A DNA stretch of 64,000 nucleotides. Source: Macrostomum lignano. Lineage: Eukaryota. Shown here one piece after another: positions 1,183 to 40,282 of the stretch. Made by a program: the position numbers and the translations under genes. Below the pieces are notes generated by a model. It saw only the letters and a list, made by a program, of their open reading frames with translations. It ran no database searches and was not told the origin of the DNA. The stretch lies in contig NIVC01000199.1 of assembly GCA_002269645.1 (NCBI GenBank), positions 124,001-188,000 on the forward strand, read 5' to 3'. Every line of letters begins with the position of its first letter. Position 1 is the first letter of the stretch.

Positions 1183-11143
<9,961 letters not shown>

Positions 11144-13034: not shown

Positions 13035-14840
13035 TCAGTGTAGCGGATGCTGCACTACGGGCTCTCGCATGTTGAATGACACGCTTTCAAAGAACGCCTC
13101 TGGGTCCTGCGACTGCTTGCGCATGCGGCGGCTCTCGGTGAGCATGAAGTCGAGGAACAGCTCCGATGTGGCAAAGTCATCGCCTCGCTGTCTGAGATGC
13201 AGCTCTGTGAACAGTCTCACTTGCAGGGCGGAGAATCCGAGCTGAGTGAGCAGTCTCACAACGGGCAGGTCGGCTCTCGCCTTGATGTCTCTGGCCTCGA
13301 CTCTGAACTCGACTCCAGGAGTGACTGCGAGAGCCTCGTCTGTGCGACTGCGGCGGACTGCAGTAGTGGCGGCGGACCCGTCGACAGTCGCAGCACCAGC
13401 TGATGCAGTTGATTCCGTCTGTACCAATGCAGTGTGACGCTGAGCAGAAGCACCGCAAGTCGGGTGCTGCACAGGAGGCGACAGTCGATGTACTGTCTGT
13501 ACAAAGTCGCTGCCTCGCTCCAACAACACGTGAGGACACCGAGGTGACCACCTGGCGTGCTCAACCCACACATCATCGTCGCAGCTCCACTCGCTCATGC
13601 AGAGTCCGCAGCTGAAGCAGCACGTCGCTCTCTCGGCTTCCGAGTAGAAGAAGCCCGCCTTTGCAAGCAAGTACACTGGCTGCTGAACGAGAGCCGAGTG
13701 CAGAGACTGCGACCTCGCTTGGTAGGTCTTGAACTGTGCGTATTTGGCAGTCACACTCGACGGATCACTCTCGAGACTGTGCTGCAGAGCGGACAGGTTC
13801 GTGAGCGCTCTCTCCGAGCACGCAGATCTCGCTGCCTCACTTGACACTGGAAGCTGAGGACGCTTCATCATATCGAAAGCGACAAGCTCGTCCTCCACAC
13901 CGCGTTCTGCATTCGTTCCAATAGTTGCGCGTGTCGCCAGCGCCTACTCATTCAGTCCAGCGAAATCCATCGGTGGTAGCTCAGCGACCAAATTCATGCT
14001 CCAATCTCCGTTCACCATCACTGCTGCATCATCTGCAGTCTGATCAGTGCACTGCACTGCCTCTACCAGCTTTGCTGACCTCGAGGCTCCTTCTGGCTCT
14101 CTATGCTCTCGAGGCACGTTGCCGACCTCGACGAACAGCACGAACGGACAGGTGGAGAAGTGGCGTCTGTGAGCCTCTCGGACCTGCTCGCCCGCCTCCC
14201 AGTCCTTGAGCACACCCTTGCAGAATGCACACTTTACTCTGTCCGACTCCTGCAGGTAGAAGAATCCGTCAGCAGCCAGATCCGTCACTGACACCAGGTG
14301 AGCCGCTGTGAAGCTGGCATCCGGCAGGTGGAAGGACTGCCACCTGTTCTCCTCTCGTCTCATGTCCCACAGGTGTTGTGGAATCGAGGCCGGCATTCCA
14401 CTCGTGTCCCATCGCTGATTGCGGAAGTTCAGAGTCTGCGGCACGGAGGACGCTCTGCCACCAGGTGTGCTGTTGTTGTAGTACCGCAGCACCTTGCTTT
14501 TACCTGTCTGTTTTTTCTGCTGACTAATTTTTTGCTCAAGCTTTTGCCTAGTCGATCTTTGGATGAGCAGACGAAGTCTCGGAATTTCGACGAGGGCCAC
14601 TGATATGAGGCAATCCCCGAAGTCATTCGTCCAGCGAATTTCCTGAAAAATTAGCTGCAGCAGTTCCTTATGGCTCTTCTTTGAGACTATGATGAATCCA
14701 AGTATTTCATTAGCGAAGTCCAATCCCTTTTGAGAGATAAGTTCTGTTGGAACTGTTTTGGATCGCAGCGATAAAATGTGTCGTTCTGCGGCTCGTATTT
14801 CAAATAGGTTGTTTTTTGAACGGTTCGTTTTACTTTCCAT
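13035..14840 (-). pseudogene. IAP paralog A: BIR1, in-frame TAG, BIR2, UBA-like; RING missing
   Basis: ORFs 13944-14840 and 13035-13898 are in the same frame, separated by TAG at 13944-13946 (TGG/Trp in B and C). BIR signatures CAFC..HRRHFSTC and CFSC..HARWSPRC. Homology to B and C stops at ~13083 (after FFES). Confidence 0.85.
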
Positions 14841-16869
14841 TATTTTTGTCGCTCGGTCAAGACAGGTTTCTTTTTGTGCAGAGAAAGTGTTATCTAAACT
14901 TCGAAACTTTTAGTTCGAAGCATCGAAACTTCGATTGACTGATGGTTGGAAATCTACAATGAAATGTTTTAGTGCTTTTGCAAAGGACTAAGCAATTAGA
15001 GTGATATATAATTGATACGTTTATGCATACTTAGTTATTTTGAGGTTTATTTTGCTAGATGCTTTCCTGATATTTTGAACACGTTCACGACAGTACGTGT
15101 ACATGCAATTAAAAAATTTGTTTTTGGCAAAAGCAAAGCACAAAAAGGTTATAGCCGCAGAACGTCTCGGTTCTTACCTGTATATAGTGTGCTCAAGACA
15201 GCTGTTGTTGTTTCTTGATAGTTCAAATTTTTTAAAACATATTTTTTCGATGGATGAGGTGAGGTGCAGTATAGGCAATAGGCAATTTAGACTAGTGGAT
15301 AAAATATAAGATGAACGCTTATTATATATATTTTAGTTAGTTGACTTGGGGTGTGAGTGAATCTTCTTGTACGAGAACGGCTTTTATGAACAGGCTCAGT
15401 ACAGAAGCAACCACCCCATCTACATTAACTGCGCTGTAAAACCAGTGTTCAGTGGTCCTTTTTTGCGCATGAAAAGCTATGCAATAAACTGTACTCGCGT
15501 TGGAATGGCCGCGGTTTGTTCGTGGATTTTTCGCGGATTATTTTGGGATTTCCCAATGTTTACTTCACTGGCTGCAGTGCTAGAGCGTTAATCTCTATGC
15601 TAACCACGTGAAAAAATAATTTTCCCATTCGACTATATATATGTGGTGTAGCTGAAGATGGCTTCTCCATGGCATTGCCACGGTTCAACCATAGCCAGTT
15701 CGTGCTATAAAAAGGATTTCTCCGGTAAGTTCTATCTGCAGGATTACTGTAAATTATACTCTCGTTTGGGGTACTAATCTGCTTAAGGGTGCAATTCACG
15801 CTACTGAGAAATTAAGGACCTCCACACCAGTTGCTCTGAGAACACTAGCTACGTGTTAGATAGGACGCATTCCCACTTGCTTGTCATGCATTAGGAAAAT
15901 GATTATCTCTGATAAAGAAGTACATAAAAATTATATAAACTAATCTGTAATATTATTCTCATTGAGAAAAAACTCATATTGAAATATTGCATATATTACA
16001 TTCACATTAAAACTCGAACGCTTTCTTACAATTTTGCTTTACACACCTTATATCGAGGATATATTGCCGTTGCTAAATTGCTCATTTGTCCATTGTTTTG
16101 ATCGCCCTAAAAAGAAATTCAGAAGTCGTTACAGTTAGAGACCAGTCTCATTGCCTGCTGATTTCTAGAAGATTTCTTTGGTTTGTTTTGTTTCAGCTAG
16201 CCAAGAATTAGAGAGAAAATTCTGCGGCAATTCCACGTTATTGCCGGGAGTTGAAAATAGCACTGACGGTATTAGTCTTGAAAACAGCTGATAAAATTAA
16301 AGTACTGGCAGCGGTGTTCTGCATGGACTAAATATAGACACACAAGCAAGTGTGTACACACCACTGTTGATGACGAAAAATGTGTTTGACTGGTTGAAAA
16401 AGATGGCAAAATCCATCTTATAGATTAGATTAGATCCCTTTAAGGTCACATCCCAGATGTATGATATATTTAAAATTACAGTTGTAACTGTTATATTAGA
16501 AAAAACGTGAGACTATTGAACTTGGTATTAAAAAAGAAAACGCTTGCCGACCATATCTTAGCTTTCAATGAAAAACTAAGGATAAGATCTCTCTAAAAGC
16601 TTTAATAATAGAGTTTTAAGCCAAAATCGACCCTTCTATAGGCCACTAAAATCAGTCAGTCAAACTTTAGTACTAAAAGTACCCAATCTTATTCGCATAA
16701 AACGAAAACTATCCTTTGCAGAAATTTCGACTGCTGACCGAACAAAGAAGAAGCATCTACATGTCAACAGAAGTACAAAACCCAAAAAATTCAAACGTAA
16801 TTCAAAAAGGTACGTCAAAAACAAAAGAATGCATAAAAACGGCATGTTCAAAAATTAATTGCTATGTGA

Positions 16870-18819
16870 ATGAAATCAGCAACATTTTCAAACTTACCGT
16901 CCATCTTGTTAAAGAATTCGAGAGTGTTCTCAAAAAAAAGAGCATATTATCTCTCAAAAAACATTTCAAATATTTTCTATGAAATTACACATTCTGCACT
17001 AAATGCCACAGATAATATAGACCATATAATAAAATGCATCGAAGAAGAACAACTGATTGCAGACGAAAAGATCCGAAGTCTTTTGTCCGTAGTTTTCTCT
17101 GAAATGCAAAAACAGCGACTACTTGTCATGAAGTCTTCAAACCAAATATCTGACCAACGAATAGTCGAGCACAAAATACAGACAGGTAAAAGCAAGGTAC
17201 TGCGGTACTACAACAACAGCACACCTGGTGGCAGAGCGTCATCAGTGCCGCAGACTCTGGACTTCCGCAATCAGCGATGGGACACGAGTGGAATGCCCGC
17301 CTCGATTCCACAACACCTGTGGGACATGAGACGAGAGGAGAACAGGTGGCAGTCCTTCCACCTGCCGGATGCCAGCTTCACAGCGGCTCACCTGGTGTCC
17401 GTGACGGATCTGGCTGCTGACGGATTCTTCTACCTGCAGGAGTCGGACAGAGTAAAGTGTGCATTCTGCAAGGGTGTGCTCAAGGACTGGGAGGCGGGCG
17501 AGCAGGTCCGAGAGGCTCACAGACGCCACTTCTCCACCTGTCCGTTCGTGCTGTTCGTCGAGGTCGGCAACGTGCCTCGAGAACACAGAGAGCCAGAAAG
17601 AGTCTTGAGTTCAGCAAAGATAATAGAGGCAGTGCAATGCTGTGATCAGACTGCAGATGATGCAGCAGTGATGGTGAACGGAGACTGGAGCATGAAGCTG
17701 GTCGCTGAGCTACCACCGATGGAGTTCGCTGGACTGAACGAGTGGGCGCTGGCGACATGCGGAATTCGTGCACCGAATGCAGGACGTGTTGTGGACGACG
17801 AGCTGGTCGCTTTCGACATGATGAAGCGTCCTCAGCTTCCAGTGTCGAGCGACGTAGCGAGATCTGCGTGCTCGGAGAGAGCGCTCACGAACCTGTCCGC
17901 TCTGCAGCACAGTCTCGAGAGTGATCCGTCGAGTGTGACTGCCAAATACGCACAGTTCAAGACCTACCAAGCGAGGTCGCAGTCTCTGCACTCGGCTCTC
18001 GTTCAGCAGCCAGTGTACTTGCTTGCAAAGGCGGGCTTCTTCTACTCGGAAGCCGAGAGAGCGACGTGCTGCTTCAGCTGCGGACTCTGCATGAGCGAGT
18101 GGAGCTGCGACGATGATGTGTGGGTTGAGCACGCCAGGTGGTCACCTCGGTGTCCTCACGTGTTGTTGGAGCGAGGCAGCGACTTTGTACAGACAGTACA
18201 TCGACTGTCGCCTCCTGTGCAGCACCCGACTTGCGGTGCTTCTGCTCAGCGTCACACTGCATTGGTACAGACGGAATCAACTGCATCAGCTGGTGCTGCG
18301 ACTGTCGACGGGTCCGCCGCCACTACTGCAGTCCGCAGCAGTCGCGCAGACGAGGCTCTCGCAGTCACACCTGGAGTCGAGTTCAGAGTCGAGGCCAGAG
18401 ACATCAAGGCGAGAGCCGACCTGCCCGTTGTGAGACTGCTCACTCAGCTCGGATTCTCCGCTTTGCAAGTGAGACTGTTTACAGAGCTGCATCTCAGATA
18501 GCGAGGCGATGACTTTGCCACATCGGAGCTGTTTCTCGACTTCATGCTCACCGAGAGCCGCCGCATGCGCAAGCAGTCGCAGGACCCGGAGGCGTTCTTC
18601 GAGAGCAGGATGTCTCAGATTCGAGAGTCGCTGAACCAACAGCCGAGACCCCGAGACACAACCGACTGGAAGACGTGCAAGGTGTGCATGGACAAGGAGG
18701 TGAACATCATGCTGCTGGACTGTGGTCACGTGGCCTGCTGCTCAGTGTGCGCCAAGTCGCTGAAGACCTGCCCCATCTGCAGAGCCTTTATTCGAGGGGT
18801 GGTATTTGTGCAAATGTAA
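16870..18819 (+). pseudogene. IAP paralog B: BIR1-BIR2-UBA-like-RING with premature TAG
   Basis: 543-aa ORF ends at TAG 18499-18501 (CAG/Gln in A and C); the same frame continues to RING CKVCMD..CGH..CC..C..CPIC and TAA at 18819. Possible extra frameshift in the A-run near 16932. Confidence 0.85.
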
Positions 18820-20189
18820 ATTCCGTTTGGATTTTGGTCTTGCTCTTCATGTGTGGTTTATGTGGCGCCGGAAACTGCACCTTGTGCTTACAAGAAAGCA
18901 AGGTAAAGGACGGCGCTAAAGAGCCGGGTAATTGTCAGACTACTATACGAAATTTTACGAAGGTATTGGTCGATTTTTCGGTAAATTATTCTAAGATTCC
19001 GTGTCTAGAACGAGTATACATGACCACAGAGTATACGAGCGCGTACTCAATAATTATGCAAAGGACTTTCTACGCTTTTTTAAAACTGATTGAGTTTGCT
19101 CATAGGCACGCTATTAATGCTGACTCTCAGATATTTCTATATGATATCCATACCACATGAGTGCAGCGCATGGTCTACTCGTGAGAAAGGCAACAATAGC
19201 AAAAATCTGCATCGCTTTTGAGAGATTTTTGCGATAAAACGCCCCCCCCCGTTTTAAGAACATGGATCTCTGATCTTTGATTATGAATCCATTCAAACAA
19301 ACAAATATTCATTTTTCACTCGGTTAGCGCACAAATAGCTTGTAGCTGTACGATTTTGGGCACTTTTATATAACAAATGTTTTTTTTTGTCTCATTATTG
19401 GAACTTCACTTGTGTTTCAGTACTGGCAACGGCTTGTACAAATTATTGTTAAAATTCTTTGTCATTTGCTGTCGTCATAACTTATCATCTGCTAATTATA
19501 TTGTGCATGTACATTTTTGTGCAAGTCTTAAGGCTTTTAATATATGAAATCATCTAAACGCCTTTGTCCGTGTCTTGAAAAAAAATGTAATTAGGTTAAA
19601 ATGAAAAAAACAAGCACCTGTATGGTACAGCGAATCGATTTCAATAGCGCATCATCATTAATTTTATTTAGTTTTGATTTCTTCAAAAGATTACACGATA
19701 TTATGACAGAAATATTAACGAAGTATAGTGGCTCTGTTTGTAATTTTCATTGGGATGGAAGTTTTGTAAAGGTATTTTTAACTGTTCCAGCTGGCCCCTA
19801 TCTCACTATCCTTATCCTTGCCTCTCCAATCTCCTTTCCTTTCTCTCTAACTCTTTAATTCTGGTCTCCTTACACCCTTTTCTCCACCGTGATCTGCACC
19901 CTCTACCTCTCGTACTACCGATATGATGTTCTATCTAATTTGCCAACTAAATAAGCGTACATGTAGGCTAACAGTCCAAAGAAGTCTCGTAAAATCAAGA
20001 AGCCAGATCGGGAAGCTTCAGATGGTGCTGCGGCGCCAGTGAGCCAACAAAGTCCGGCCGTTCCGTTGAAGCCATCAGAGGCCATCACTTATACAATGCA
20101 GATGACTTCAGACTTGGTCCCGCCCGAATTGAAGTCCTGAAGAGACTGGGCGAAATCGCCGTTAGCCCCCGCACCCTTGAATCGGGGCA

Positions 20190-21125
20190 TCATGCAGAAT
20201 CGTTGCTGCCGCCAGTCTGACCGAAGATGCTCGATAAGGAGCGGACCAGTTGGCTCAGGATGTCACCTGCGCCGCAAAATGACATCTGAATCGCTGACGA
20301 GCTCCTGTTGGTGGCGGCTGCAGTCACCGACGGGCCGCTGATGTCGGTGACGCCTCCGCCTGCAAACTGATGGGCAACGTCAGCGGCACTCGCCGTCGAG
20401 TAGCACCGTCGGTGGCTTCGGCCGTTGCCAGCTGCCGACGACATCGCAGAGCCGCTGGCGAAGTCTTCCAGCCGCTCCCGGTTGGTGTTGTGGGCATCGG
20501 CACCGATGGCTGCTTGGATGCCGCCGCTGTCGCTGACATTGCTCTGACTGGCTGCAACCGGCGACATCGCTAGAGAACAGGGAAGGGTTGAGCTGATGCT
20601 GGAGGCACCAATTTACAAATTGTAATGTTCAAATGTTTCCTTGCTTGGATTCGCTTCACATTTCATCAATCATGTTAGATCGTTGAGCACTCAAATTTCT
20701 AGCTATACATGTATTGTGGGATGTCTTTTTATGCCTTCAAATTTTATTCAAAACGCGATGGTTCAGTGTCTTGAAATCATGTCACGGTTGGTGGTTTGAT
20801 GAGCGTGATTTTTGTCTGGATTGATGGATGGTATTTTAGACTTGACAGGGGGGTCATTTTTAAGTTGATTAGTGACATTTTGGAGCTCACTACCTTCCGG
20901 CTGTCCATAGCGCCCGCCTCTGTCAGGTGAAGCTGACCCGGTTTCAAAGCTGACTGCCATGGATGACGCGGATCCTGCAGTCGATTGTTGATGCAGCGAC
21001 ATAGCAGCCCAACTCAGACTTTGTAGTCCATGAGCATCTGCATCTGTAGGAAGCGACAGGTCGTCTTCTGCTGACAGACCACTGAATTCCGAGGCCAGGT
21101 CCGGCTCGCTCGTTGTGTTTGGCAT
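20190..21125 (-). CDS. Orphan gene X1 (2 exons, 204 aa, Ser/Ala-rich), paralog of X2
   Basis: Exons 21125-20891 and 20569-20190; phase-1 intron GTGAGC...TCTCTAG. Shares MPxTTxxPDLxSEFSGL, SSMAVSFE, RRCxST and NRSxSxxQxxFCGA with X2. Confidence 0.65.
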
Positions 21126-21635
21126 TTCCGCAGACTCGCATTTGCACACAATTCTGTTTGCTTGTAGCTATAAATTTTTCGACTCGGAACAACCTACAGT
21201 TAGGAAAGACCTACAACCAAAGAATTTCCACGGCCGTTCCATGGCAAATCCACGCCATGCCAGAAAATTTCAGTAGCAAGTGTGCTACAGTGAAATGCAT
21301 GGGCTGCTTCAGTATAAATGTACATCAAATGCACATTTCAAATCTAGGTTATTTTTTGTGTAGGACAGAAAAACCTCGTTTTGCTACTCGAAACATGTAG
21401 CTTGTAATGAAATATGCGTTTATATTTGTATTGTCGCTATTTTTAATAATTTATACTAATGTTATGTATTCTAGTAATGTATTGTACCAACTATTTACTT
21501 GCTGTAATTGTTATTGTATTATTTTTTATGAATAGTATTTGACTTACTTGACTTAGCTGCAGGGGGCTCCGTGCGTCCGGAAGCAGCGAGGAGGCGTTGC
21601 CGCCCATTTCGCTAACCCCTGGCGACCACGGGCAG

Positions 21636-25330
<3,695 letters not shown>

Positions 25331-25482
25331 CCACTCCGGGAATTCCACGAGTGGTCCGCGCAGCTTCCTGCCGGCTCAAGGCGAGTTGTGCAGGAGAGCT
25401 GCCTCTTCTGCCTCGCCGATAGCTCCAGGCTCCAGCTCCATGGGCTCCTCCCGGATGGATTCCATGGTCGAGGGCGAGGTCG

Positions 25483-26843
25483 CTACCTGGGCGGCATTCT
25501 CGCTCTCGGCCCGGTTTTCCGGGGGGCCGCAGTGGTGACACTGGGCTGGGGGTGGCTGCGGTTGGGGGCCTTGGCGGTGTCCAGCAGCTGCTTCGCGCGC
25601 TGAGTCAGACCAGAGCGGATAGTGTTCCGGGCGGGTTTCCGGCCCTTTCCACGTCCGCCTGTTGCTGCAGCTTTCGCGGCTTTCCCTCTGACAGGGTCCA
25701 CGTCCTCGGAGGGGTCGTGACGACCGGGAGCTTCTTTTCCTGGGCGTTTCCGCCCGGCAGAGCCCCCGACTGCCCGCTTACGCTTCTCCGGGGGCGGTGG
25801 GCGGGTGGCGTCAGACTCAAAGCTAAAGAGCTGAATCTGCAACAGCCCGACAGAGATGATGGACATGTCCGGGTAGCGGAGCATCCAGCTATCCGACAGT
25901 CCAAGAATAGCCGTGAAACCGTCTCCGCCCGGCTTGGAGATGGTCTCGTGAACTACGACACCGTTGGCCGGTAGCTCCGGGTTGGAAGCTACTAGCAGGT
26001 GACGCAGCTCGTCGGCCTTGGTGATGCAGTTGCGAGCCGGGATCCAGGCACGGTGCCGGTGTGTCCGGGGTCGCTCGTCCTCCCTGTAGATGAACAGGTT
26101 CTCCAGCTCCGTACCCCAGTCGAAAGTTTTCAGCAGCTCGAGGAGCTGCTGTCCTGACTGGCTGTCGGTGGGCTGGATATGGAGGGCTTGGTCCTCGACT
26201 TTCGTCTTTTGGACTCGAATAGTAGTGCCGCTCAAGGCCATCTTGACCAGGTGGGAGTCCAACCTGCGCCAGATAAGGTCGAGCTGTTCGGCCGTAAGAG
26301 GCGTCTCCTGGCCTTGGATAACCAGGGCCGGCTGCCTTTTGGCCATAGCCGCGTAGGTTCGCTTCGGCTTTGTGGTTTGGCCAGCGCCCCCCGCTTTGGA
26401 TCCCTCACGGCCGTGGGAGCTTCCACACGGGCAGAGGTCCGGTCACGGGAGGGGCCAGCCGCACCAGGAGCTTCGGCGGCACCTGACGCATCAGACCGGC
26501 GCGCGGGGTCCACCCCCTTGTCGGATGTCGGCTCCTCCGCGGGGTTCGCAGAGTTACCGGCACCCTCCTCAGAGGTGGCCGGAGGGGCGGCTTTCGCATT
26601 CCTCCGTTCCTCCGCTTTGCGCTGGAGAAAGGCTTTGTAGCGAGCAATGCTACGGGCCTTCTTTTTCGAAATCTGAGGTCCGCTGTCTTGTCCAGCCACT
26701 CCGGTATTATCCTGAGCGGCGGCAGCGGCAGATTGAGAGGCACCGGGGGTTCCGGTGTTGCGAATGTCCGGCTGGGCCGCGGTGCCAACCTCGGTTGGTG
26801 CTCCAGCAGCCTCGGACGTGTCGGAGGTAAAAGAATACTCCAT
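25483..26843 (-). pseudogene. LINE ORF1 (split by one frameshift near 26360)
   Basis: ORF 26232-26843 joins ORF 25483-26346 through a TYAAMAK segment; located upstream of ORF2 inside the TSD-bounded element. Confidence 0.75.
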
Positions 26844-28418
26844 GAGTCGCTGAAAGGCGAGTGGGGACTAAAGGTGAGAAGCCGCTGGGCCGTAACCCCA
26901 AACCCAACAACCAGGCCAAGAGGTAGCGACCGGGGGGTGGCTTAAGCCCGTACCGGCCCGACCGCTAGCAACCGAGAAACTCCCCGGCTAAGAGCCCGGC
27001 TTGGAAAAACCAGAGGCCGAACCAAAGGACCATCAGCACGGTACTACACTGGGCCCTTGAGGGAAGCAGGAGGACTGCCTCCGGAGCCTGCGGACTAGCC
27101 GCATACCCTGTTAAGGTCAGAGGGTGGTACCTGTTCCTCAGAGCCGTGGCCAGAGGTACCTGATACGCACAGGTGCACTTCCGGGCGGAGCCCGTACCCA
27201 ACTTGGCCAAAAGGCCACGGATGGGTTGCCGCCGCCGGAGCCCAGTCAGTCCAGCAGCCCTAGGGCTGCCTTGAACACATGCGGAGCGTGAACCCCTGGG
27301 TCGGCTTGCGAGTCAGCTTGGAGAGAGTTCTCCTGCCATTCCTGCACCAGAATAGAGGGGGTGCAGGTGTGTAGGATCGCAGACCTTAGCCCGTAGGCCT
27401 AGTCTGTCTCATGCTACACAGGCGTGCTGTACCCGCCTTGCATGCATGAATAGTATTTTGTATGCAAATATAAGGTAAAACCAGTTTAAACCGGTTAGGC
27501 GCGCGTTGTGCAGTTAGTCTCTCAGGTGGCTGCCGGTAACCATTAGACGCTTCATCATAGAGACAGACGTCAAACTACCCGCCGTAGACATAGACTTATA
27601 CTAGAATATTACATTATTTAAGTTTAGTTAGAGCCTAGTTAATATCATAACTACTATTACTATTATTAGCCCATCCAAATACCAATATTATCCAGAATAT
27701 AATATTTACAGCCAGCGCGTGCCACCTAATCTAACTGGATCATTAATATTGTAATATATTCTGTCGACCTATATTAACCTTCACAAATATTAAACCTGAT
27801 TGCTCTGGCAGCGTCTTTGTTTCAATTTCTTTTACTCAACTCCAGTACAGAGAATTTGAATGGCGACCACAAAAATATAGTTTATTACAAGCTAAAAAAA
27901 GCTCATCGATGTCATTTGTCACAGGCGATGGTGCATGCAGGATTTTAATAATCCACCGGAAAACAAATAAAGTAATGGGTTGTGAACACTGAAGTAAATT
28001 CATAATGCAGAATGTTTTATATGGTCTCGATTTCTTCTGCCTTCTTAAATTCTGCCTGAAATTCCGGTCTCAATTTTCTAGTTAGAAAATGTCTCATTCA
28101 CAAGGGCATCTCTCCAAAGTTTATTTATACGAGCGTATTTACGCTAAGAACTATTGGACAGAAAGCAGGACAGGGAACCAATTAAATTTATTTTTACACC
28201 AAGTAACAGTCAATTAAATGCTTCATCTCCTAACTGATTTCAAATAGGCTGTACTTCTGTATACATTACCTGTAAATGCCTCAAGCGAAACTTCAAGCGA
28301 AATGCTGCTCTTTTCATTTAAAACGTGACTATGCAATTTTGAAACTGTACAAGTCTGATCGTCATCAATTCCGCTTCAGCACAGGGTTTATATTGCAACC
28401 ACAATATACGCGCATACA

Positions 28419-29309
28419 TTACGAGATGACTGCGTTTGAATCTGTTTCAATTGTCAGCGTCGTTGTTTGACTGACAGTAAAAGTCGACAGACTGGACACC
28501 GATCGGATCATGCCTGCTAAGAAGATTTCTGCCCCGCAAAATCGTAGTTGCCTTGGTGATGCTGACCGGTTGACATTTGCAGCAACTGCGGCTGCCCTGC
28601 CTCGGCTCTCCGGTGCTCTGTTGCCAGCTGTGTGAGCGGATATGCCAGTTGAGTGACACCGGCGAAGACTCTGACCAGCGGTCGCTGTAGCCGACGCAGC
28701 ATCGCCAGCAAAACGTTCAACTCGCTCCAAGTCTGCAGCAGCATGGACTCCTCTAGCTTGATGAGGCATCGCTTCTCTGTCATCAGAAGCTGGCAACGGG
28801 AGAAACAAATGTGGAGAGATTGTTCTTTAATTAAAAAAACTTAAATATATGAATAGTGGCTACTTCTAGCAGACCAGACTCAATGCTCTTTAAACTATAT
28901 TGTGGCCAAGGAATGGCTAAGGTAGCTGCATACACTGAATTCCGTTAATTTTTTTTCGAAATTCTAGCGATTATTTCGAATGCAGGCGAATTTTTAAATC
29001 ATTACGAGCTACTTGATTTAAAAGATTTGTAGAAGGCTGAACTTTTTATTACTTTTAATTTTCTCACAGCAGATGAATTGCCTTCTCACCACGACCAGGT
29101 GATTCTGACCAGCTGTACTCAGTGCCACCTGGCCCTAGCTCAAAGCTGACTGCCATCGATGAATACGAATCGGAGTATTGTTGATGCTCCAGCTGGCTCT
29201 GGTGCATCGCGTCGTCATCAGAATGAAGCGAAGCCGGTGCATGACCCTGCTCTTCATGTAGGCCGCTAAATTCAGAGGATAAGTCTGGATCTCGCGTTGT
29301 TTTCGGCAT
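28419..29309 (-). CDS. Orphan gene X2 (2 exons, 196 aa), paralog of X1
   Basis: Exons 29309-29090 and 28789-28419; phase-1 intron GTGAGA...TTGCCAG at an equivalent position to X1; same conserved blocks. Confidence 0.65.
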
Positions 29310-29562
29310 TTCTGACAATGTCGCTTGGAAAACCTTTTTAATATAGCTTTCTCTTTGACAGACAGTATATTTACAGTCTAGTTACACATTCCAGGAGTTC
29401 CAGCTATATTTAGCCTAAGCCTTGCCGCAAGGCATCTCCACGGCAATTCCACGGCAAGACCCTGGAAATTTCGCTAGATTCAACCAACCACTCAGGTCAG
29501 AGAATTGCTTCAAAGTGCGTACTGTGAAGCAAGTACGCTTGCATTTCAAATGGAAGGCTGCT

Positions 29563-30393
29563 ATATATATATATATATTAGGACAAGCGGGGAGACTCCT
29601 TGCGCGCACGCCCTCGCAGAACAGGTGGGGGGCAGGCAGCAGCAGCCTGAGGGGTCAGTGCAAACGCCTGCAAGTCAGCGATGTGCATGGCAGTCAGTCA
29701 GTATGGCAATTCGGGCCTGGCCGATGCAGCAGGTCCAGGACCAGTAGGACGGGCGCACCGCGACCCAGGGTCCGGAGGCAGAGGCCCAAAAGCATGGGCG
29801 ACGCTCAGGGGCGCCGCTCCAGGGCTTTGGTCGGCAGGCGCTACGCTACGAGCAGTGCACGCCCAGCGCGTAGCGCAGCAACGAACGATAGAGCGCGTCC
29901 AGGGCTCGCTCTCGCGTCTCGGTCAGTGGCACAGCCTCCATGCCGTACAAGAGGATCGGCTCTATGGCCGCGCGGAACAGGCGCACCCTTCAGGCTGTCT
30001 CTGGCAACTGAATTGGGGAAATTCCTGAGGAGGTGCGCGGAGCGACAGGCCTGCTTCTTCCTGTCGGAGACCAGGCCTCCGGCGCCGAGGTACCGGAAGT
30101 CCTCGCACACCGCGATGCGGTCTCCATTGGGCAGCGTGAGAGCTGGGGCGGTATTCGTGCCCACGTGCAGCGCCTCCGTCTTGCGAGCGTTCACCAGCAG
30201 CCCAACACGGGCGCCCTCGTCGCAGAGCTTTGAGAGCTCGTCAGCATACGCGAGAGCGGGAAGCGAAACAGCAGGGTGTCTGAAGTCTGGAGCTTCGGCG
30301 TGGGACCAGCAAGTAGCTGTCATCCTCGCGGAGGGACCGACGATGTAGTCCACAACCACGAGAAAGAGCAGAGGAGCCAGCGTGTTGTCCTGA
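29563..30393 (-). mobile_element. 5'-truncated, degraded RTE-like LINE
   Basis: QDNTLAPLLFLVVVDY, LAYADE (YADD-derived), VGLLVNARKTE, EDFRYLG, RLFRAAIEPILLYG; (TA)n tail at ~29565-29580. Confidence 0.8.
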
Positions 30394-30489
30394 ATGCCCG
30401 CAGTCTCAGTCAGACATGGAGACTGCAGAGCTGAAAAAGCTGGCAGCCGAGCTCAACGTTGCCAAATGGCAGATTGTGACTCCCAAAGT

Positions 30490-30830
30490 AGAGAGGAAAG
30501 AGGGAAAGACAGGGGAAAATGGAGAGGAGAAAGTGAGGGGAAAAGAGGAAAGACAGGGGAAGAGAGAGGGGAAGAGACAGGGGTAAGAGAGAGGGGGAAG
30601 AGAGGGGAAGAGAGAGGGGGAAGAGAGAGGGGGAAGAGAGGGGAAGAGAGAGGGCTAAGAGAGAGGGGAAGAGACAGGGGTAAGAGAGAGGGGGAAGAGA
30701 GGGGAAGAGAGAGGGGGAAGAGAGAGGGGGAAGAGAGAGGCGGAAGAGATAGGGGTGAGAGAGAGAGGGGGGAAGAGAGAGGGGGAAGAGAGAGAGGAAG
30801 AGAGAGGGGAAAGAGACAGGGAAAAAGGAG
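30490..30830. repeat. Purine-rich GAGAGGGGAA tandem repeat
   Basis: Direct reading. Confidence 0.9.
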
Positions 30831-32100
30831 GAGTTTTGTGAAGGTGGTCACTTACGGCTAGACTAGTAAACTAAAAAGCTCTGATGCTCCATTTTGCATA
30901 AAACTGGGAGAATTCTTCACTCGTTTCCACTCTATCTGCTCGAGGAAATCCTTGAATACTCAATGAGGGATACGAGTTGAACTACGGATTCCCATTCATT
31001 GCTTGAATGTACAAAAACACTGTACACTTTGCACTGCGCATATACGAACACTTGCAAATTTTTGGACATTTCCAATGTACATTCATTAAATGTGCCTTGC
31101 AGAACCTAGAAAAAGGTTATATGCGGTTGTCAACGTTAACTTGAAGCACAAACTGAAGTAAACATACAGCAATAGCCAGCAGAAGGTCGCGCGACACTTA
31201 CAGTACGCGGTATGGATAATTTAAACATGGTCATTGTGTGAAACTGAATCTGATTTATTCTACTTTGTATGTATGTACTTTCTGTATGTATGTATGTATG
31301 TATGTATGTAGAAAATTAATTATCCGCTAATTCCATGGACCGTGCAATTGGTTTTCTATAGCGCATTTTAATTTTTTCTGCTCACAATCACAATTTTGGT
31401 GGCAACCCGGGAAGGACAAAGCCGGTGGGGCATTTCGATTGTAGCACGAAAAATTACGAAATCTTAAAAAAACTTTTATTCGCTTCCCTACACTTTTAGA
31501 CCGAAGTAGCGAGTTCGTTAATCGGTGGAGCCTTGCTATTTTCTGGATTTCAAAGCTCGATGTTGAGGCATCAAAACCAGCCAACTAGACATTGTTTGAC
31601 GACAGAGAAAGTGTGCAGGAATTCTCATTGCACACAATTATCAAGGTTACATCGTAAGTTTTTGGCTTTTGTATATTTATATTCACTATTTTTCAGTGCA
31701 ATATTCTGGAGGGGTACCATGCCTTTTGCAGCTGGCGACCTACAAGACATTGTAGTGAATATTGTCAGGGGGCCAAGCCAAGGGAAGTTAATCCCTCATC
31801 CCAACCCCAAGTTGGTTCCAGGTTTTAAAGGAGATTCCATGGACCAGCCACGGTTTTGCCTTTTGATCCAAAAATAGAACTTGGGAATTCTGTATGTGTA
31901 CGGAGCTGATAAAGTAACTGCACGCTATACAGTGGATATACTACGAAGTCTTAAAATAGAATTTTAAGCTCTCAAAAACACCCGGCCTCAATGCCTTTCC
32001 CACTAGGTCACCGACTGACCAACCTGAAATTATTAAGTAAATTTCTGCAAACAGATGCCATATAATTGCAATTCTTGTATTTTAAATACTCGTATACATT

Positions 32101-32708
32101 GACTGACTGACTGACTGACTGACTGACTGACTGACTGACTGACTGACTGACTGACTGACTGACTGACTGACTGACTGACTGACTGACTGACTGACTGACT
32201 GACTGACTGACTGACTGACTGACTGACTGACTGACTGACTGACTGACTGACTGACTGACTGACTGACTGACTGACTGACTGACTGACTGACTGACTGACT
32301 GACTGACTGACTGACTGACTGACTGACTGACTGACTGACTGACTGACTGACTGACTGACTGACTGACTGACTGACTGACTGACTGACTGACTGACTGACT
32401 GACTGACTGACTGACTGACTGACTGACTGACTGACTGACTGACTGACTGACTGACTGACTGACTGACTGACTGACTGACTGACTGACTGACTGACTGACT
32501 GACTGACTGACTGACTGACTGACTGACTGACTGACTGACTGACTGACTGACTGACTGACTGACTGACTGACTGACTGACTGACTGACTGACTGACTGACT
32601 GACTGACTGACTGACTGACTGACTGACTGACTGACTGACTGACTGACTGACTGACTGACTGACTGACTGACTGACTGACTGACTGACTGACTGACTGACT
32701 GACTGACT
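32101..32708. repeat. Perfect (GACT)n microsatellite, 152 units
   Basis: Direct reading; 608 bp uninterrupted. Confidence 0.98.
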
Positions 32709-32816
32709 GCAGCAGACGTACATATATATATCACCTAATTCTGTTTTTTAATATCAAACAACCAAAAATTTCCAGCACCAGAGTTCATCACCAAGCTTGA
32801 GCAAAAACATCAACAA

Positions 32817-34817
32817 TTGAATCAAATACGTTCGGCTCTAATTCTACTGTTAATCTGCAGCATGCGTCAATTCGATTCTATTCTTCAATGGCAGGCAGAT
32901 TCATTTCGTCCTCCGCAGTCGCTTAACGAAACTACATTACACGGTGCTTCCCCAGAAAGATCCACTGACTTCATAGATGTGGAGCTGACAAGTAATGTAG
33001 TCATGCCAACAGAAAATTTTGTAAGAATGCAGCCAGGCACTGCAGCAGCCAGCTGTAACCCGAAAGACTCATTAGCTGTTGCATTAAAAGGCGTAGCTGA
33101 CACTGAAATGCCTAAGCAGCGAATGCTCATAGCAGCTCAGCTTCGAGATTCAAGATATTTCAGTACATCTGACACGCGACAATTGGTACAAACAGGTAAG
33201 AGCAAGGTGCTGCGGTACTACAACAACAGCACACCTGGTGGCAGAGCGTCATCAGTGCCGCAGACTCTGGACTTCCGCAATCAGCGATGGGACACGAGTG
33301 GAATGCCGGCCTCGATTCCACAACACCTGTGGGACATGAGACGAGAGGAGAACAGGTGGCAGTCCTTCCACCTGCCAGATGCCAGCTTCACAGCGGCTCA
33401 CCTGGTGTCCGTGACGGATCTGGCTGCTGACGGATTCTTCTACCTGCAGGAGTCGGACAGAGTAAAGTGTGCATTCTGCAAGGGTGTGCTCAAGGACTGG
33501 GAGGCGGGCGAGCAGGTCCGAGAGGCTCACAGACGCCACTTCTCCACCTGTCCGTTCGTGTTGTTCGTCGAGGTCGGCAACGTGCCTCGAGAGCACAGAG
33601 AGCCGGAAGGAGTCTTGAGTTCAGCAAAGCTGGTAGAGGCAGTGCAATGCAGTGATCAGACTGCTGATGATGCAGCAGTGATGGTGAACGGAGACTGGAG
33701 CATGAAGATGGTCGCTGAGCTACCACCGATGGAGTTCGCTGGACTGAACGAGTGGGCGCTGGCGACACGCGCAACTTTTGGAACGAATGCAGAACGCGAT
33801 GTGGACGATAAGCTGGTCGCTTTCGACATGATGAAGCGTCCTCAGCTTCCAGTGTCGAGCGACGTAGCGAGATCTGCGTGCTCCGAGAGAGCTCTCACGA
33901 ACCTGTCAGCTCTGCAACACAGTCTCGAGAGTGATCCATCGAGTGTGACTGCCAAACACGCACAGTTCGAGACCTACCAAGCGAGGTCGCAGTCTCTGCA
34001 CTCGGCTCTCGTTCAGCAGCCAGTGTACTTGCTTGCAAAGGCGGGCTTCTTCTACTCAGAAGCCGAGAGAGCGACCTGCTGCTTCAGCTGCGGACTTCGC
34101 ATGAGTGAGTGGAGCTGCGACGATGATGTGTGGGTTGAGCACGCCAGGTGGTCACCTCGGTGTCCTCACGTGTTGTTGGAGCGAGGCAGCGACTTTGTAC
34201 AGACAGTGCATCGACTGTCGCCTCCCGTGCAGCACCCGACTTGTTGCGCCTCTGCTCAGCGTCACACTGCATTGGTACAGACGGACTCAACTGCATCAGC
34301 TGGTGCTGCGACTGTCGACGGGTCCGCAGTCCGCAGCAGTCGCGCAGACGAGGCTCTCGCAATCACATCTGGAGTCGAGTTCAGAGTCGAGGCCAGAGAC
34401 ATCAAGGCGAGAGCCGACCTGCCCGTTGTGAGACTGCTCACTCAGCTCGGATTCTCCGCTCTGCAAGTGAGACTGTTCACAGAGCTGCATCTCAGACAGC
34501 GAGGCGACGACTTTGCCACATCGGAGCTGTTCCTCGACTTCATGCTCACCGAAAGCCGCCGAATGCGCAAGCAGTCGCAGGACCCGGAGGCGTTCTTCGA
34601 GAGCAGGATGTCTCAGATTCGGGAGTCTCTGAACCAACAACCGAGACCCCGAGACACAACCGACTGGAAGACGTGCAAGGTTTGCATGGACAAGGAGGTG
34701 AACATCATGCTGCTGGACTGTGGTCACGTGGCCTGCTGCTCAGTGTGCGCCAAGTCGCTGAAGACGTGCCCCATCTGCAGAGCCTTCATCCGTGGCTCAG
34801 TGTTTATTAAGATGTAA
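32817..34817 (+). CDS. IAP paralog C: intact BIR-BIR-UBA-like-RING protein (DIAP1/BIRC-like)
   Basis: 666-codon open frame with two BIRs, UBA-like PVVRLLTQLGFS and a C-terminal RING. The annotated start is TTG; first ATG is 32862 and a phase-1 acceptor (TTTCCAG) precedes 32776, so the true start is uncertain. Confidence 0.92.
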   Translation: MNQIRSALILLLICSMRQFDSILQWQADSFRPPQSLNETTLHGASPERSTDFIDVELTSNVVMPTENFVRMQPGTAAASCNPKDSLAVALKGVADTEMPKQRMLIAAQLRDSRYFSTSDTRQLVQTGKSKVLRYYNNSTPGGRASSVPQTLDFRNQRWDTSGMPASIPQHLWDMRREENRWQSFHLPDASFTAAHLVSVTDLAADGFFYLQESDRVKCAFCKGVLKDWEAGEQVREAHRRHFSTCPFVLFVEVGNVPREHREPEGVLSSAKLVEAVQCSDQTADDAAVMVNGDWSMKMVAELPPMEFAGLNEWALATRATFGTNAERDVDDKLVAFDMMKRPQLPVSSDVARSACSERALTNLSALQHSLESDPSSVTAKHAQFETYQARSQSLHSALVQQPVYLLAKAGFFYSEAERATCCFSCGLRMSEWSCDDDVWVEHARWSPRCPHVLLERGSDFVQTVHRLSPPVQHPTCCASAQRHTALVQTDSTASAGAATVDGSAVRSSRADEALAITSGVEFRVEARDIKARADLPVVRLLTQLGFSALQVRLFTELHLRQRGDDFATSELFLDFMLTESRRMRKQSQDPEAFFESRMSQIRESLNQQPRPRDTTDWKTCKVCMDKEVNIMLLDCGHVACCSVCAKSLKTCPICRAFIRGSVFIKM

Positions 34818-39502: not shown

Positions 39503-40282
39503 CTAATAAGCTGGAAATAAGCTCTGCTAATTTCACTGCAGTACGCTGATACTTGTGGACGTCTCACTAAATTGTAAATAAAGCCAGTTTTTTGTCACCA
39601 ATCTTTGGTAAAGCGCGAGCATCGAGAACGCTCACTTGGATTAAATTGTTCCTTCGACTTTCTAGAGCCCTCATTGGTCTCTGGCTTCGTTCTTTCTTCG
39701 GTTTTGATGAATTGTTCGAATCTCCCAGCCGTGTCTCAGAGAGCTTACAGTAGAGATCGCGCTTTAAGTAAAGTCCTTCCGTGCCTTTAGCACAAATAAT
39801 CGTAAAGAAACTCCACGTGTTTTTGATTGTTCCAGAGATATTTCTAAAGTAGCTAAGAAGCGAGAGAGCACGCCGAGGGCCGACGCTTGTGTCTATTTTA
39901 TAGATGCCATGAGACGGAGACGCTATCGGCAGCCGCTGGAGGGGGTGGATTCTCTCTTGGTTAGCAACGGCCTCAGCTGGCACTGCAGGTAAACAGACGC
40001 AAGCAATTATAGATTTTTACATTGAACTAGCAGGTTGCTGCAGGCGAGATAAATTATTTGATATTATAGTTACTTATAGCGAGGTTGAGTCGTCAGAGCG
40101 ATTAGGGGAGCTCAATCAGGAGACGTCTCTTTTTCTTTTGCGCATATCAGACCCCCACTGATCCATGCAGCCTTCGGTTTTCAGCGCGATCAGGTGAGCC
40201 GTATGCTTCTCGTTCTTCAGTCGGCCAAATTCCACACTGGCGTCAGCACTGATCTCGCCTGTCAACCGTTAATTGCTTGTCT

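What the first reader, a model, noticed from the sequence alone, without database searches (positions are those of the whole stretch)
14500..33200. IAP paralogs have near-identical cores but barely alignable N-termini, with a sharp boundary at ACAGGTAA
From QTGKSKVLRYY (A ~14510, B ~17179, C ~33189) the three copies are nearly identical in DNA. The ~105-125 codons upstream stay open in all three but align only at one motif: LISVALVEIPRLRLLI (A), LLSVVFSEMQKQRLLV (B), LKGVADTEMPKQRMLI (C), each 18-20 residues before QTG. Inference: old paralogs whose BIR-RING portion is repeatedly homogenised by gene conversion while an uncharacterised N-terminal module diversifies.
Basis: partly seen in the sequence, partly recalled or inferred. 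Interest (0 to 1): 0.7.

Follow-up and report, generated by a model that had tools for sequence, protein, structure and literature searches.

The report
Gene conversion homogenises flatworm IAP paralogs
Three neighbouring apoptosis-inhibitor (IAP) genes of the flatworm Macrostomum lignano share a 1.6-kb middle section that is kept about 96% identical by copying between the genes, while each keeps its own old, loosely constrained front and rear ends; this is a clear but ordinary case of concerted evolution.

Summary
The window is Macrostomum lignano DNA with three intronless IAP copies: A (minus strand), B and C. From the codons Q-T-G-K onward they are 94.7-96.2% identical. Upstream, they match no better than shuffled sequence, apart from one short motif in the same position in all three. 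The upstream frames are stop-free for 103-150 codons.

Ten more copies from other M. lignano contigs show the same cliff at the 5' end. They also show a second cliff about 30 nt before the stop codon. There are at least seven types of N-terminal tail. Each is conserved (95-99.7% over 300 nt, C_W aside) between duplicated copies of the region. The core is 95-98% identical among all types in the main family and carries no orthology signal.

The core is a mosaic. Of the informative site pairs, 53% fail the four-gamete test, and Rm = 24. A and B share a 481-nt identical tract. Core dS is 0.09, against about 1 in the N-terminal tails of the C and D types.

ACAGGTAA is only the codons for T-G-K. It varies synonymously among copies and is not a conserved splice site. 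In this window only C is intact: A and B each carry a TAG stop, and A-type copies have no RING. This is a new member of a known kind, of modest interest.

The parts
14511..14840 (-). Copy A, type-specific N-terminal tail (ATG at 14840-14838; 110 codons up to the Q codon)
   Evidence: Open frame of 133 codons, against 47 and 5 in the other frames. 96.3% identical over 300 nt to its positional counterpart A_5 on contig NIVC01003532.1 and unalignable to B and C.
14562..14609 (-). Copy A motif LISVALVEIPRLRLLI
   Evidence: Sits at the same position as the B and C motifs and scores above shuffled controls.
13083..14510 (-). Copy A core (linker + BIR1 + BIR2 + helical region); homogenised segment, here only 1.43 kb
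   Evidence: 94.7% identical to C and 96.2% to B. One BIR hit in the first ORF fragment, E=9e-16.
13944..13946 (-). Premature TAG in copy A (TGG in B, C and A_5)
13035..13082 (-). A-type private C-terminal tail (VSFNMREPVVQHPLH, then stop); there is no RING
   Evidence: The same tail is present in A_5, so it is a feature of the type and not damage specific to this window.
13353..13833 (-). A-side arm of the 481-nt tract that is identical between A and B (recent conversion tract)
   Evidence: All 53 consecutive variable sites agree, and 6 alleles are exclusive to A+B. Pair-specific P=2e-11; 0 of 300 permutations reached the observed run.
16870..17178 (+). Copy B, type-specific N-terminal tail (103 codons from the ATG at 16870). 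A longer form starting at 16761 (MSTEVQ...) is put out of frame by an A8 run at 16932-16939 (A7 in B_5 and B_4).
17080..17127 (+). Copy B motif LLSVVFSEMQKQRLLV
17179..18788 (+). Copy B core (homogenised segment, from QTGK to PICRAF)
   Evidence: 95.5% identical to C. Two BIR stretches.
17856..18336 (+). B-side arm of the 481-nt tract identical between A and B
18499..18501 (+). Premature TAG in copy B (CAG in all other copies)
   Evidence: The older assembly's gene model P0004, whose closest match is copy B, omits the residues around this stop.
18789..18819 (+). B-type private last codons (..GVVFVQM, then stop)
   Evidence: Conserved in B_5 and B_4 and different in the other types.
32862..33188 (+). 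Copy C, type-specific N-terminal tail (109 codons from the first ATG). The proximal 126 nt are 87-92% identical to the C_4, C_5 and D_5 copies; the distal part is only 45-55% identical.
33084..33131 (+). Copy C motif LKGVADTEMPKQRMLI
   Evidence: AlphaFold places the only N-terminal helix within the motif region here (residues 87-93).
33189..34786 (+). Copy C core (homogenised segment): linker, BIR1, BIR2, UBA-like helices and RING up to PICRAF
34787..34817 (+). C-type private last codons (..GSVFIKM, then stop)

Best explanation
The window carries three members (A, B, C) of an intronless IAP subfamily that was found here only in Macrostomum lignano. The protein layout is a private N-terminal tail of about 105-140 residues, a 38-residue linker, BIR1, BIR2, UBA-like helices, a RING, and about 8 private last residues. 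The genes lie in a tandem cluster, and the genome holds at least three near-identical copies of that region.

Each position in the cluster has its own old N-terminal tail, its own last codons and its own flanks. The 1.6-kb segment between the codons QTGK and PICRAF is repeatedly overwritten in short patches by non-allelic gene conversion among all members. This keeps even its synonymous sites about 96% identical and makes every copy a mosaic.

Shown here:
- the two homology cliffs;
- the conflict between orthology in the tails and flanks and no orthology in the core;
- the mosaic pattern, and a fresh 481-nt tract shared by the head-to-head neighbours A and B;
- that the tails are reading frames.

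Inferred:
Conversion needs matching sequence on both sides of a tract, so tracts cannot cross into the diverged tails. What lies inside is homogenised, what lies outside drifts, and the edge sharpens itself.
- The C/D group fits this picture with a stepwise fall in identity: core 95-98%, proximal tail 87-92%, distal tail about 50%.
- The tails are weakly constrained, probably disordered regulatory extensions in front of BIR1.

ACAGGTAA is simply Thr-Gly-Lys codons and has no signal function.
For: Identity and organism:
- The best hits are M. lignano proteins at 90-95% identity. Pfam finds two BIR stretches plus a RING.

Regional copies:
- L005 (NIVC01003532.1) and L004 (NIVC01000010.1) run in the same order as the window, at 88-99% identity including flanks. 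They carry A, B, C (and D) at matching positions.

Tails follow position:
- Upstream 300 nt: A_W/A_5 96.3%, B 95.3-99.7%, F 99.3%, C_5/C_4 98.7%. Between types the match is at shuffled level.
- The last codons are also specific to each type.

Core does not follow position:
- Main-family copies are 95.1-98.0% identical all-against-all. A_5 is closest to C_W (98.0%), not to A_W (95.8%).
- In some same-type pairs the core is more diverged than the upstream flank: F_1/F_6 3.2% vs 0.3%; C_5/C_4 2.3% vs 1.0% upstream and 0.7% downstream (Fisher p=0.004).

Mosaic:
- 74 informative sites; 53% of pairs fail the four-gamete test; Rm=24.
- Neighbouring sites are more compatible than permuted ones (0.420 vs 0.534 +/- 0.019; 0 of 5000).
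- A_W and B_W share a 481-nt identical tract spanning 53 variable sites, with 6 alleles exclusive to the pair.

Synonymous divergence:
- Core dS is 0.087 (range 0.053-0.133) with dN/dS 0.23. N-terminal dS among C/D subtypes is 0.78-1.2.

Spread of W->S alleles:
- With G_2 as outgroup, derived W->S alleles sit in 4.9 of 12 copies on average, against 2.5 for S->W (p=0.002).

Tails are coding:
- All seven types have a stop-free frame, P about 1e-3 to below 5e-5 each, with 2-16 stops in the other frames.
- Variation within QTGK is synonymous only.
- pN<pS among C/D subtypes, p=1.5e-3 to 6e-7.
- GenBank CDS derived from transcripts include the tail in a single exon for types F, C and G.

Copy-specific haplotypes of B and C recur in the earlier assembly's gene models.
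Against: - No RNA reads could be inspected, so exon status and the true start codons are inferred.
- E-type tails have no ATG at all. The nearest single-copy paralog, P0008, starts at the position equivalent to MPASIP. A short isoform starting there is therefore possible.
- Among very close same-type pairs, N-terminal pN/pS is 0.69 and not significantly below 1 (28 substitutions).
- The core is not more diverged than the flanks in every same-type pair (A_W/A_5 and B_5/B_4).
- The jump in GC3 (0.33-0.44 in the tail, 0.65-0.67 in the core) also occurs between the two exons of the unconverted paralog P0008 (0.28 vs 0.81). Composition alone is therefore not evidence for biased conversion.
- Short-read polishing of 96%-identical copies could inflate the apparent mosaicism.
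Confidence: 0.8

Rival explanations
1. The AG at the boundary is a cis- or spliced-leader trans-splice acceptor. Under this reading the upstream frames are intron or outron, the protein starts downstream (for example at MPASIP), and homology ends there because only the exon is conserved.
For: - M. lignano trans-splices 30-39% of its genes with a 35-nt leader ending in ATG.
- Four gene models from the older assembly start exactly at KSKVL, that is, right after ACAG|.
- E-type tails lack an ATG, and GenBank starts that protein at MPASIP.
- P0008 starts at the equivalent position.
- The tail is low-confidence in AlphaFold and has a non-coding-like GC3.
Against: - Neither AG is conserved. The first is CAA in the C, D and E types, and the second is ACT-G in G. 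All variation in QTGK is synonymous, as expected for translated codons.
- The site does not fit the published trans-splice motif [T/C]TNCAG and has no pyrimidine tract.
- All seven types keep 103-188 stop-free codons in this one frame.
- pN<pS in C/D tails.
- Transcript-derived GenBank CDS read through the boundary in one exon.
- This reading does not explain the second cliff inside the ORF at the 3' end.
- The KSKVL starts are what a splice-aware aligner produces when a paralog's transcript is mapped onto the wrong copy.
Confidence: 0.05
2. A recent burst copied only the 1.6-kb core (by partial duplication or retroposition) into pre-existing loci. The similarity would then reflect young age, not ongoing conversion.
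For: - The family is intronless, whereas its nearest paralog P0008 has an intron inside BIR1.
- Core identities are uniform at about 96%.
- A non-LTR retrotransposon lies in the cluster.
Against: - A single burst predicts a clean tree and mostly private mutations. Instead, 53% of informative site pairs are incompatible, Rm=24, and patches are shared across types and across regional copies.
- Positional counterparts are not each other's closest cores.
- A and B share a fresh 481-nt tract that their counterparts A_5 and B_5 do not share.
- Both cliffs lie inside the ORF, with homologous but old coding sequence outside them, and there is no poly(A) tail at the 3' edge.
Confidence: 0.06
3. The mosaic pattern is an artefact of assembling and polishing near-identical paralogs in a highly redundant genome. 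The copies would be real but the patchwork would not.
For: The Mlig_3_7 assembly contains 180 Mb of non-repetitive blocks that are duplicated at 95% identity or more. Homopolymer differences such as A8 vs A7 occur.
Against: - Copy-specific haplotypes of B and C, including B's stop, recur in gene models of the earlier, separately built assembly: 12 mismatches to the right copy against 25 or more to any other.
- The cliffs and the type-specific tails do not depend on polishing.
- The 481-nt A/B tract carries 6 alleles found in no other sampled copy. Mis-mapped reads from other copies would not create these.
Confidence: 0.05
4. Purifying selection on the BIR-RING protein alone keeps the cores alike, while unconstrained tails drift.
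For: Core dN/dS is 0.23 and tail dN/dS is 0.3-0.7.
Against: Synonymous sites are homogenised too: dS is 0.087 in the core against about 1 in the adjacent tail of the same genes. Selection on the protein also cannot produce shared synonymous patches or a one-codon-wide cliff.
Confidence: 0.01

Closest known systems
Concerted evolution of tandem paralogs by non-allelic (interlocus) gene conversion with sharp tract limits. Textbook cases recalled from memory are primate gamma-globin HBG1/HBG2, RHD/RHCE and the red/green opsin genes.
   Same: A defined segment is kept near-identical among old duplicates, synonymous sites included. Flanks keep the true, older history. The copies are mosaics of short patches. 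GC-raising alleles reach more copies.
   Different: Both limits lie inside one uninterrupted exon, not at introns or intergenic sequence. At least seven cluster positions take part, and all 12 main-family copies sampled from six contigs show the same level of similarity. The genome is a hidden polyploid flatworm, for which no such case turned up in the paper searches.
IAP/BIRC proteins of the XIAP/cIAP/DIAP type (BIR domains, UBA, C-terminal RING)
   Same: Two BIR domains and a C3HC4 RING reach the Pfam thresholds. AlphaFold models BIR1, BIR2, a helical UBA-like region and the RING with confidence. Relatives at 24-28% alignment identity include ant, spider, annelid and brachiopod IAPs.
   Different: A private stretch of about 150 residues lies in front of BIR1, made up of the type-specific tail and the shared linker. 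The tail has no detectable relatives. A-type members lack the RING. The subfamily is intronless.
Clustered genes with variable first exons and a shared constant region (protocadherins, UGT1A; recalled from memory)
   Same: Variable N-terminal coding pieces are combined with an (almost) constant remainder in a tandem array. The junction sequence CAG|GTAAG looks like a splice site.
   Different: Every copy carries its own constant part, continuous with its tail in one open frame, so no splicing is needed. The one annotated model that joins a B tail to a D core is more simply explained as a mapping or assembly chimera.
Spliced-leader trans-spliced genes of M. lignano
   Same: Same organism. An AG sits exactly where similarity begins. 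The leader ends in ATG.
   Different: The AG is not conserved, the published acceptor motif is absent, and the upstream sequence is an open, constrained reading frame.

Membership tests
IAP / BIRC protein family | At least one BIR (baculoviral IAP repeat) zinc-binding domain | tested here: met
   PF00653 in C (2 stretches, E=5.9e-27), B (2 stretches, E=9.8e-30) and A (E=9.2e-16). Cys/His zinc ligands are invariant in the 22-sequence alignment.
IAP / BIRC protein family | C-terminal RING E3 ligase domain (in the XIAP/cIAP/DIAP subgroup) | tested here: met
   PF13920 in C (E=4e-13). B has the RING codons downstream of its premature stop. A-type copies lack the RING altogether.
IAP / BIRC protein family | Caspase binding or anti-apoptotic activity | not testable with these tools
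   Requires biochemistry or RNAi.
Concerted evolution by interlocus gene conversion | A tract far more similar among paralogs than their flanks, synonymous sites included | tested here: met
   Core 95-98% identical against cross-type flanks at shuffled level. Core dS 0.087 against about 1 in the adjacent C/D tails.
Concerted evolution by interlocus gene conversion | Conflict between the history of the tract and the history of its flanks | tested here: met
   Tails and flanks group by cluster position across three regional copies, and the core does not (A_5 is closest to C_W).
Concerted evolution by interlocus gene conversion | Mosaic of short shared patches (recombination signal) | tested here: met
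   53% four-gamete failures and Rm=24. PHI-like test 0 of 5000. 481-nt A/B tract.
Concerted evolution by interlocus gene conversion | GC-biased transmission | tested here: inconclusive
   W->S alleles are present in more copies (p=0.002). However, polarisation rests on one outgroup copy, and a similar GC3 jump exists in the unconverted paralog P0008.
Splice or trans-splice acceptor at the boundary | Conserved AG with the acceptor context ([T/C]TNCAG for the M. lignano spliced leader) | tested here: not met
   Both candidate AGs are lost in some copies through synonymous changes, and the motif is absent.
Splice or trans-splice acceptor at the boundary | Upstream sequence is non-coding | tested here: not met
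   103-188 stop-free codons in the core's frame in all types. pN<pS in C/D tails.
Splice or trans-splice acceptor at the boundary | Reads or cDNAs with a junction at the site | not testable with these tools
   No RNA reads were accessible. Only transcript-derived CDS annotations could be consulted.
Processed retrocopies | Loss of the parental introns | tested here: met
   The family is a single exon, whereas P0008 has an intron inside BIR1.
Processed retrocopies | Copy ends at the mRNA ends, with a poly(A) remnant | tested here: not met
   Both homology limits lie inside the ORF. The 3' limit is about 30 nt before the stop, and no A-run follows it. Target-site duplications were not searched for.
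Variable-first-exon clusters (protocadherin / UGT1A type) | Many variable exons share one constant region through splicing | tested here: not met
   Each copy has its own core, continuous with its tail in one frame.

The most novel reading that the evidence does not exclude
The boundary sequence CAG|GTAAG may act both as a splice donor and as an AG acceptor. Read-through transcripts across the same-strand copies (B, C, D) could then join the N-terminal tail of one copy to the core of a downstream copy, seamlessly and in frame. That would turn the cluster into a combinatorial 'variable tail + constant core' locus. The only hint is GenBank model PAA50936, which joins the B_5 tail to the entire D_5 core across about 28 kb. 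Chimeric de novo transcripts or multi-mapping in 96%-identical cores explain that model at least as well.
Probability: 0.05. Interest if true: 0.7.

Novelty: new member of a known kind. Interest (0 to 1): 0.3.

Why it matters
- It is a well-delimited example of concerted evolution at the level of a gene segment. A 1.6-kb cassette inside a single exon is homogenised across at least seven cluster positions and three regional copies of a hidden-polyploid genome, while private coding ends keep the old history.
- There are practical consequences for this regeneration model organism. Short reads from the cores cannot be assigned to a gene. Gene models become truncated or chimeric, as in the KSKVL-start models and PAA50936. 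Only the tails and the last codons can serve as copy-specific probes, RNAi triggers or qPCR targets.
- Biologically, the pattern suggests that the members differ mainly in a short-motif-bearing tail in front of BIR1. In other IAPs (from memory: the XIAP linker, the DIAP1 N-terminus) this is a region that tunes caspase binding and stability.
- None of this overturns current understanding.

Tried and rejected
- Splice or trans-splice acceptor at ACAG|GT: rejected because of synonymous variation at the site, the missing motif and the open upstream frames.
- Splice-leader ATG as the start codon at the boundary: it is in frame only if the first AG is used, and C, D and E types lack that AG.
- Known domain in the tails: Pfam at E<=1 gave only sub-threshold noise. 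phmmer against 1.84 billion representatives gave one hit to a repetitive protein, which I judge to be chance.
- Structure of the tail: AlphaFold gave pLDDT<50 for residues 1-141. No fold search was attempted on such a model.
- 'Core always more diverged than flanks between positional counterparts': true for F and C_5/C_4 but not for A or B_5/B_4, so it is not used as a general argument.
- GC3 jump as proof of biased conversion: weakened by the same jump in P0008.
- Literature on these genes: searching the six Mlig gene identifiers in full texts, and in the supplements of one M. lignano transcriptome paper (PMC5816591), found nothing. No paper on Macrostomum IAPs was found.
- RNA evidence from run assemblies: the protein clusters contain only NCBI and UniRef members (plus one MetaClust entry), so no transcript contigs could be fetched.

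Full report
WHAT IS THERE. The window is nuclear DNA of the free-living flatworm Macrostomum lignano. The intact copy's protein is 90-95% identical to annotated M. lignano proteins, and the next relatives are animal IAPs at about 25% identity. Pfam finds two BIR stretches and a C3HC4 RING in copy C.

There are three copies:
- A lies on the minus strand at 13035-14840.
- B lies at 16870-18819, with a possible longer start at 16761.
- C lies at 32862-34817.

A and B are head to head, with their 5' boundaries 2.7 kb apart. C lies 14 kb downstream of B, beyond a non-LTR retrotransposon.

CHECKING THE OBSERVATION. BLAST and MAFFT confirm it.
- From the Q codon of QTGK (14510, 17179, 33189) the copies are 94.7-96.2% identical.
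- One codon upstream, all nucleotide similarity stops.
- Between types, the upstream 300 nt match no better than shuffled sequence.
- The upstream frame continuous with the core is stop-free for 133, 103 and 150 codons. The other two frames have 4-12 stops each. Shuffling gives P of 1e-4 to 2e-4 per copy.
It always aligns at the same distance from QTG.

Four corrections are needed.
1. A has a premature TAG (13944-13946) and no RING. Its similarity ends at 13083.
2. B has a premature TAG (18499-18501) and a homopolymer length difference in its tail. Only C is intact in this window.
3. A second cliff exists at the 3' end, about 30 nt before the stop codon. After it, each type has its own last codons and UTR.
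4. ACAGGTAA is not invariant in the family.

WIDENING THE SAMPLE. Cluster look-ups and exact-protein look-ups gave six more loci of the family from the Mlig_3_7 assembly.
- Two of them, L005 and L004, run in the same order as the window at 88-99% identity, flanks included. They carry copies at the same positions: A_5, B_5, C_5 and a further D_5; and B_4, C_4.
- The published assembly is known to hold 180 Mb of such duplicated blocks, because the sequenced line has extra large chromosomes (PMC5730564).
- Together with copies of types E, F and G on other contigs, this makes 13 copies and seven N-terminal types.
- The 12 main-family copies share the same 5' cliff. In the outlier G, similarity begins about 40 nt further in.

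THE DECISIVE CONTRAST. Tails and flanks follow cluster position.
- Upstream 300 nt: A_W/A_5 96.3%, B copies 95.3-99.7%, F_1/F_6 99.3%, C_5/C_4 98.7%.
- The private last codons behave the same way.

The core does not follow position.
- The 12 main-family copies are 95.1-98.0% identical to one another, with no preference for positional counterparts.
- A_5 is closest to this window's C (98.0%) and not to A (95.8%).

The core is a patchwork.
- It has 168 variable and 74 informative sites. Of informative site pairs, 53% fail the four-gamete test, and at least 24 exchange events are needed.
- Neighbouring sites are more compatible than randomly ordered ones (0 of 5000 permutations).
- In this window, A and B share a perfectly identical 481-nt tract (A 13353-13833, B 17856-18336). 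It covers 53 sites that vary in the family and includes six alleles found in no other copy. Their counterparts A_5 and B_5 do not share that tract.

Synonymous divergence is 0.087 in the core. It is 0.78-1.2 in the N-terminal tails of the C/D subtypes, the only tails that can be aligned codon by codon. Selection on the protein cannot explain a tenfold step in dS at a single codon. A single recent burst of copying cannot explain the mosaic. Gene models from the earlier, separately built assembly reproduce the copy-specific haplotypes of B and C, which argues against a pure assembly artefact.

IS THE BOUNDARY A SPLICE SITE? M. lignano trans-splices many genes. Its leader ends in ATG, and the published acceptor motif is [T/C]TNCAG (PMC8629364).
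- The boundary does not fit that motif and has no pyrimidine tract.
- The codons Q-T-G-K vary among copies only synonymously (CAG/CAA, ACA/ACT, GGT/GGC, AAA/AAG). This removes one or the other AG in five of the 13 copies. That is the signature of translated codons, not of a signal.
- All seven tail types are open in the core's frame (P from about 1e-3 to below 5e-5 each).
- Six types have their first ATG 103-115 codons upstream of Q.
- pN is significantly below pS among C/D subtypes.
- GenBank CDS for this assembly were derived from RNA-seq-based transcripts. For types F, C and G they include the tail in one exon.
- The old models that begin at KSKVL are what splice-aware mapping of a paralog's transcript onto the wrong copy would produce.

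Some uncertainty remains.
- No reads could be inspected.
- E-type tails have no ATG.
- The single-copy paralog P0008 starts at the position equivalent to MPASIP.
- Close same-type pairs show pN/pS of 0.69, not significantly below 1.

WHAT THE TAIL IS. It has no Pfam domain. It has no relative among 1.84 billion representative proteins, apart from one hit to a repetitive protein that I judge to be chance. AlphaFold gives pLDDT below 50 for residues 1-141, with a single short helix at the motif. BIR1, BIR2, a UBA-like helical region and the RING are modelled confidently. With a shallow alignment this is weak evidence. It fits a weakly constrained, probably disordered extension carrying one short linear motif. 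It does not fit a folded, diversifying module.

WHY THE CLIFF IS SHARP (inference). Conversion tracts must begin and end in matching sequence. Once the tails had diverged, tracts could no longer cross into them. Everything inside keeps being homogenised and everything outside drifts. The C/D group shows an intermediate stage. Its cores are 95-98% identical, the proximal 126 nt of the tail 87-92%, and the distal tail about 50%. This is what an inward-shrinking conversion domain would look like.

With the outlier copy G_2 as outgroup, derived W->S alleles are present in more copies than S->W alleles (p=0.002), as GC-biased conversion predicts. However, the GC3 step from tail to core (0.33-0.44 to 0.65-0.67) also exists between the two exons of P0008. 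Composition alone therefore proves nothing.

COMPARISON AND VERDICT. The mechanism is the familiar concerted evolution of tandem paralogs by non-allelic gene conversion. The genes are ordinary members of the IAP family, in a lineage-specific intronless expansion. Less usual features are:
- both limits lie inside one exon;
- many positions and regional copies take part;
- the setting is a hidden-polyploid flatworm.

No publication on these genes was found.

The most novel reading still open is that the donor-like and acceptor-like junction allows splicing between copies. The only hint is a GenBank model that joins the B_5 tail to the whole D_5 core. I give it about 5%.

It is of modest general interest.

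Noticed in passing
window 21636-26843 (minus strand): Non-LTR retrotransposon between copies B and C. It has RVT_1 and RNase H (21636-24236), an endonuclease/exonuclease/phosphatase domain (24633-25541) and an ORF1-like frame (25483-26843). No counterpart was found in the duplicated region L005.
   Followed up: partly
window 45002-53925: LTR retrotransposon with 1001-nt LTRs that are 99.0% identical. L005 is continuous across the site (window 45001|53924 corresponds to L005 29678|29673, an overlap of about 6 nt). This looks like a recent insertion private to this copy of the region.
   Followed up: partly
window 8134-9590, 9804-10941, 38061-39503, 56833-57318, 57322-60728, 32100-32709: Several long satellite arrays with periods of 11, 23, 34, 17 and 23 nt. 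There is also a perfect (TGAC)x152 microsatellite about 150 nt upstream of copy C's first ATG. It creates long spurious 'SVSQ' ORFs.
   Followed up: no
window 20190-21192 and 28419-29318 (minus strand): Two copies of a gene with no Pfam hit, recognisably related at the protein level (by eye) but not found by nucleotide BLAST. This is an old duplication inside the same cluster that was not homogenised.
   Followed up: partly
window 16761-16940: Copy B has an A8 run (16932-16939) where B_5 and B_4 have A7. This puts the longer N-terminal form (MSTEVQNPK...) out of frame. Both frames are open over about 70 nt. The out-of-frame reading (TFSNLPSILLKNSRVFSKKR) resembles the F-type motif region (z=5.0).
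   Followed up: partly
L005 10001-40404 (GenBank PAA50936 = P0039): An annotated gene model joins the B_5 N-terminal tail to the complete D_5 core across about 28 kb. It is either a chimera caused by the near-identical cores or a hint of splicing between copies at the CAG|GTAAG junction.
   Followed up: partly
all copies, about -309 to -345 nt from the Q codon; L003 about 5695 (-192): In B_W, C_4, D_5 and F the first in-frame ATG lies at most one codon after the nearest upstream in-frame stop. The E-type tail has no ATG in 116 open codons but has an in-frame TTTTTCAG at -192. This would let the spliced leader's ATG serve as the start codon.
   Followed up: partly
L007 3001-5292 (P0008, single-copy IAP paralog): It has one intron inside BIR1 (donor TTACAG|GTAAAT) and a striking composition step: exon 1 GC3 is 0.28 and exon 2 GC3 is 0.81. 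It lacks the N-terminal extension of the expanded subfamily.
   Followed up: partly
L005, N-terminal tail of C_5 (about 18580): C_5 carries a TAA where C_4 has TCA, truncating its tail frame to 52 open codons. Together with the stops in A_W and B_W, this shows that individual members are being knocked out while the family persists.
   Followed up: no
P0006 vs P0045 (G-type copies on two contigs): The two G-type proteins differ by a patch that matches the main family in one of them (MPASIPQHLWDM vs IPASIPQQLCDM). This suggests occasional conversion from the main family into the outlier G type.
   Followed up: no
window 30394-30861: A G/A-rich 13-nt repeat (GGGGAAGAGAGAG)n gives long low-complexity ORFs on both strands. 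It is probably non-coding.
   Followed up: no
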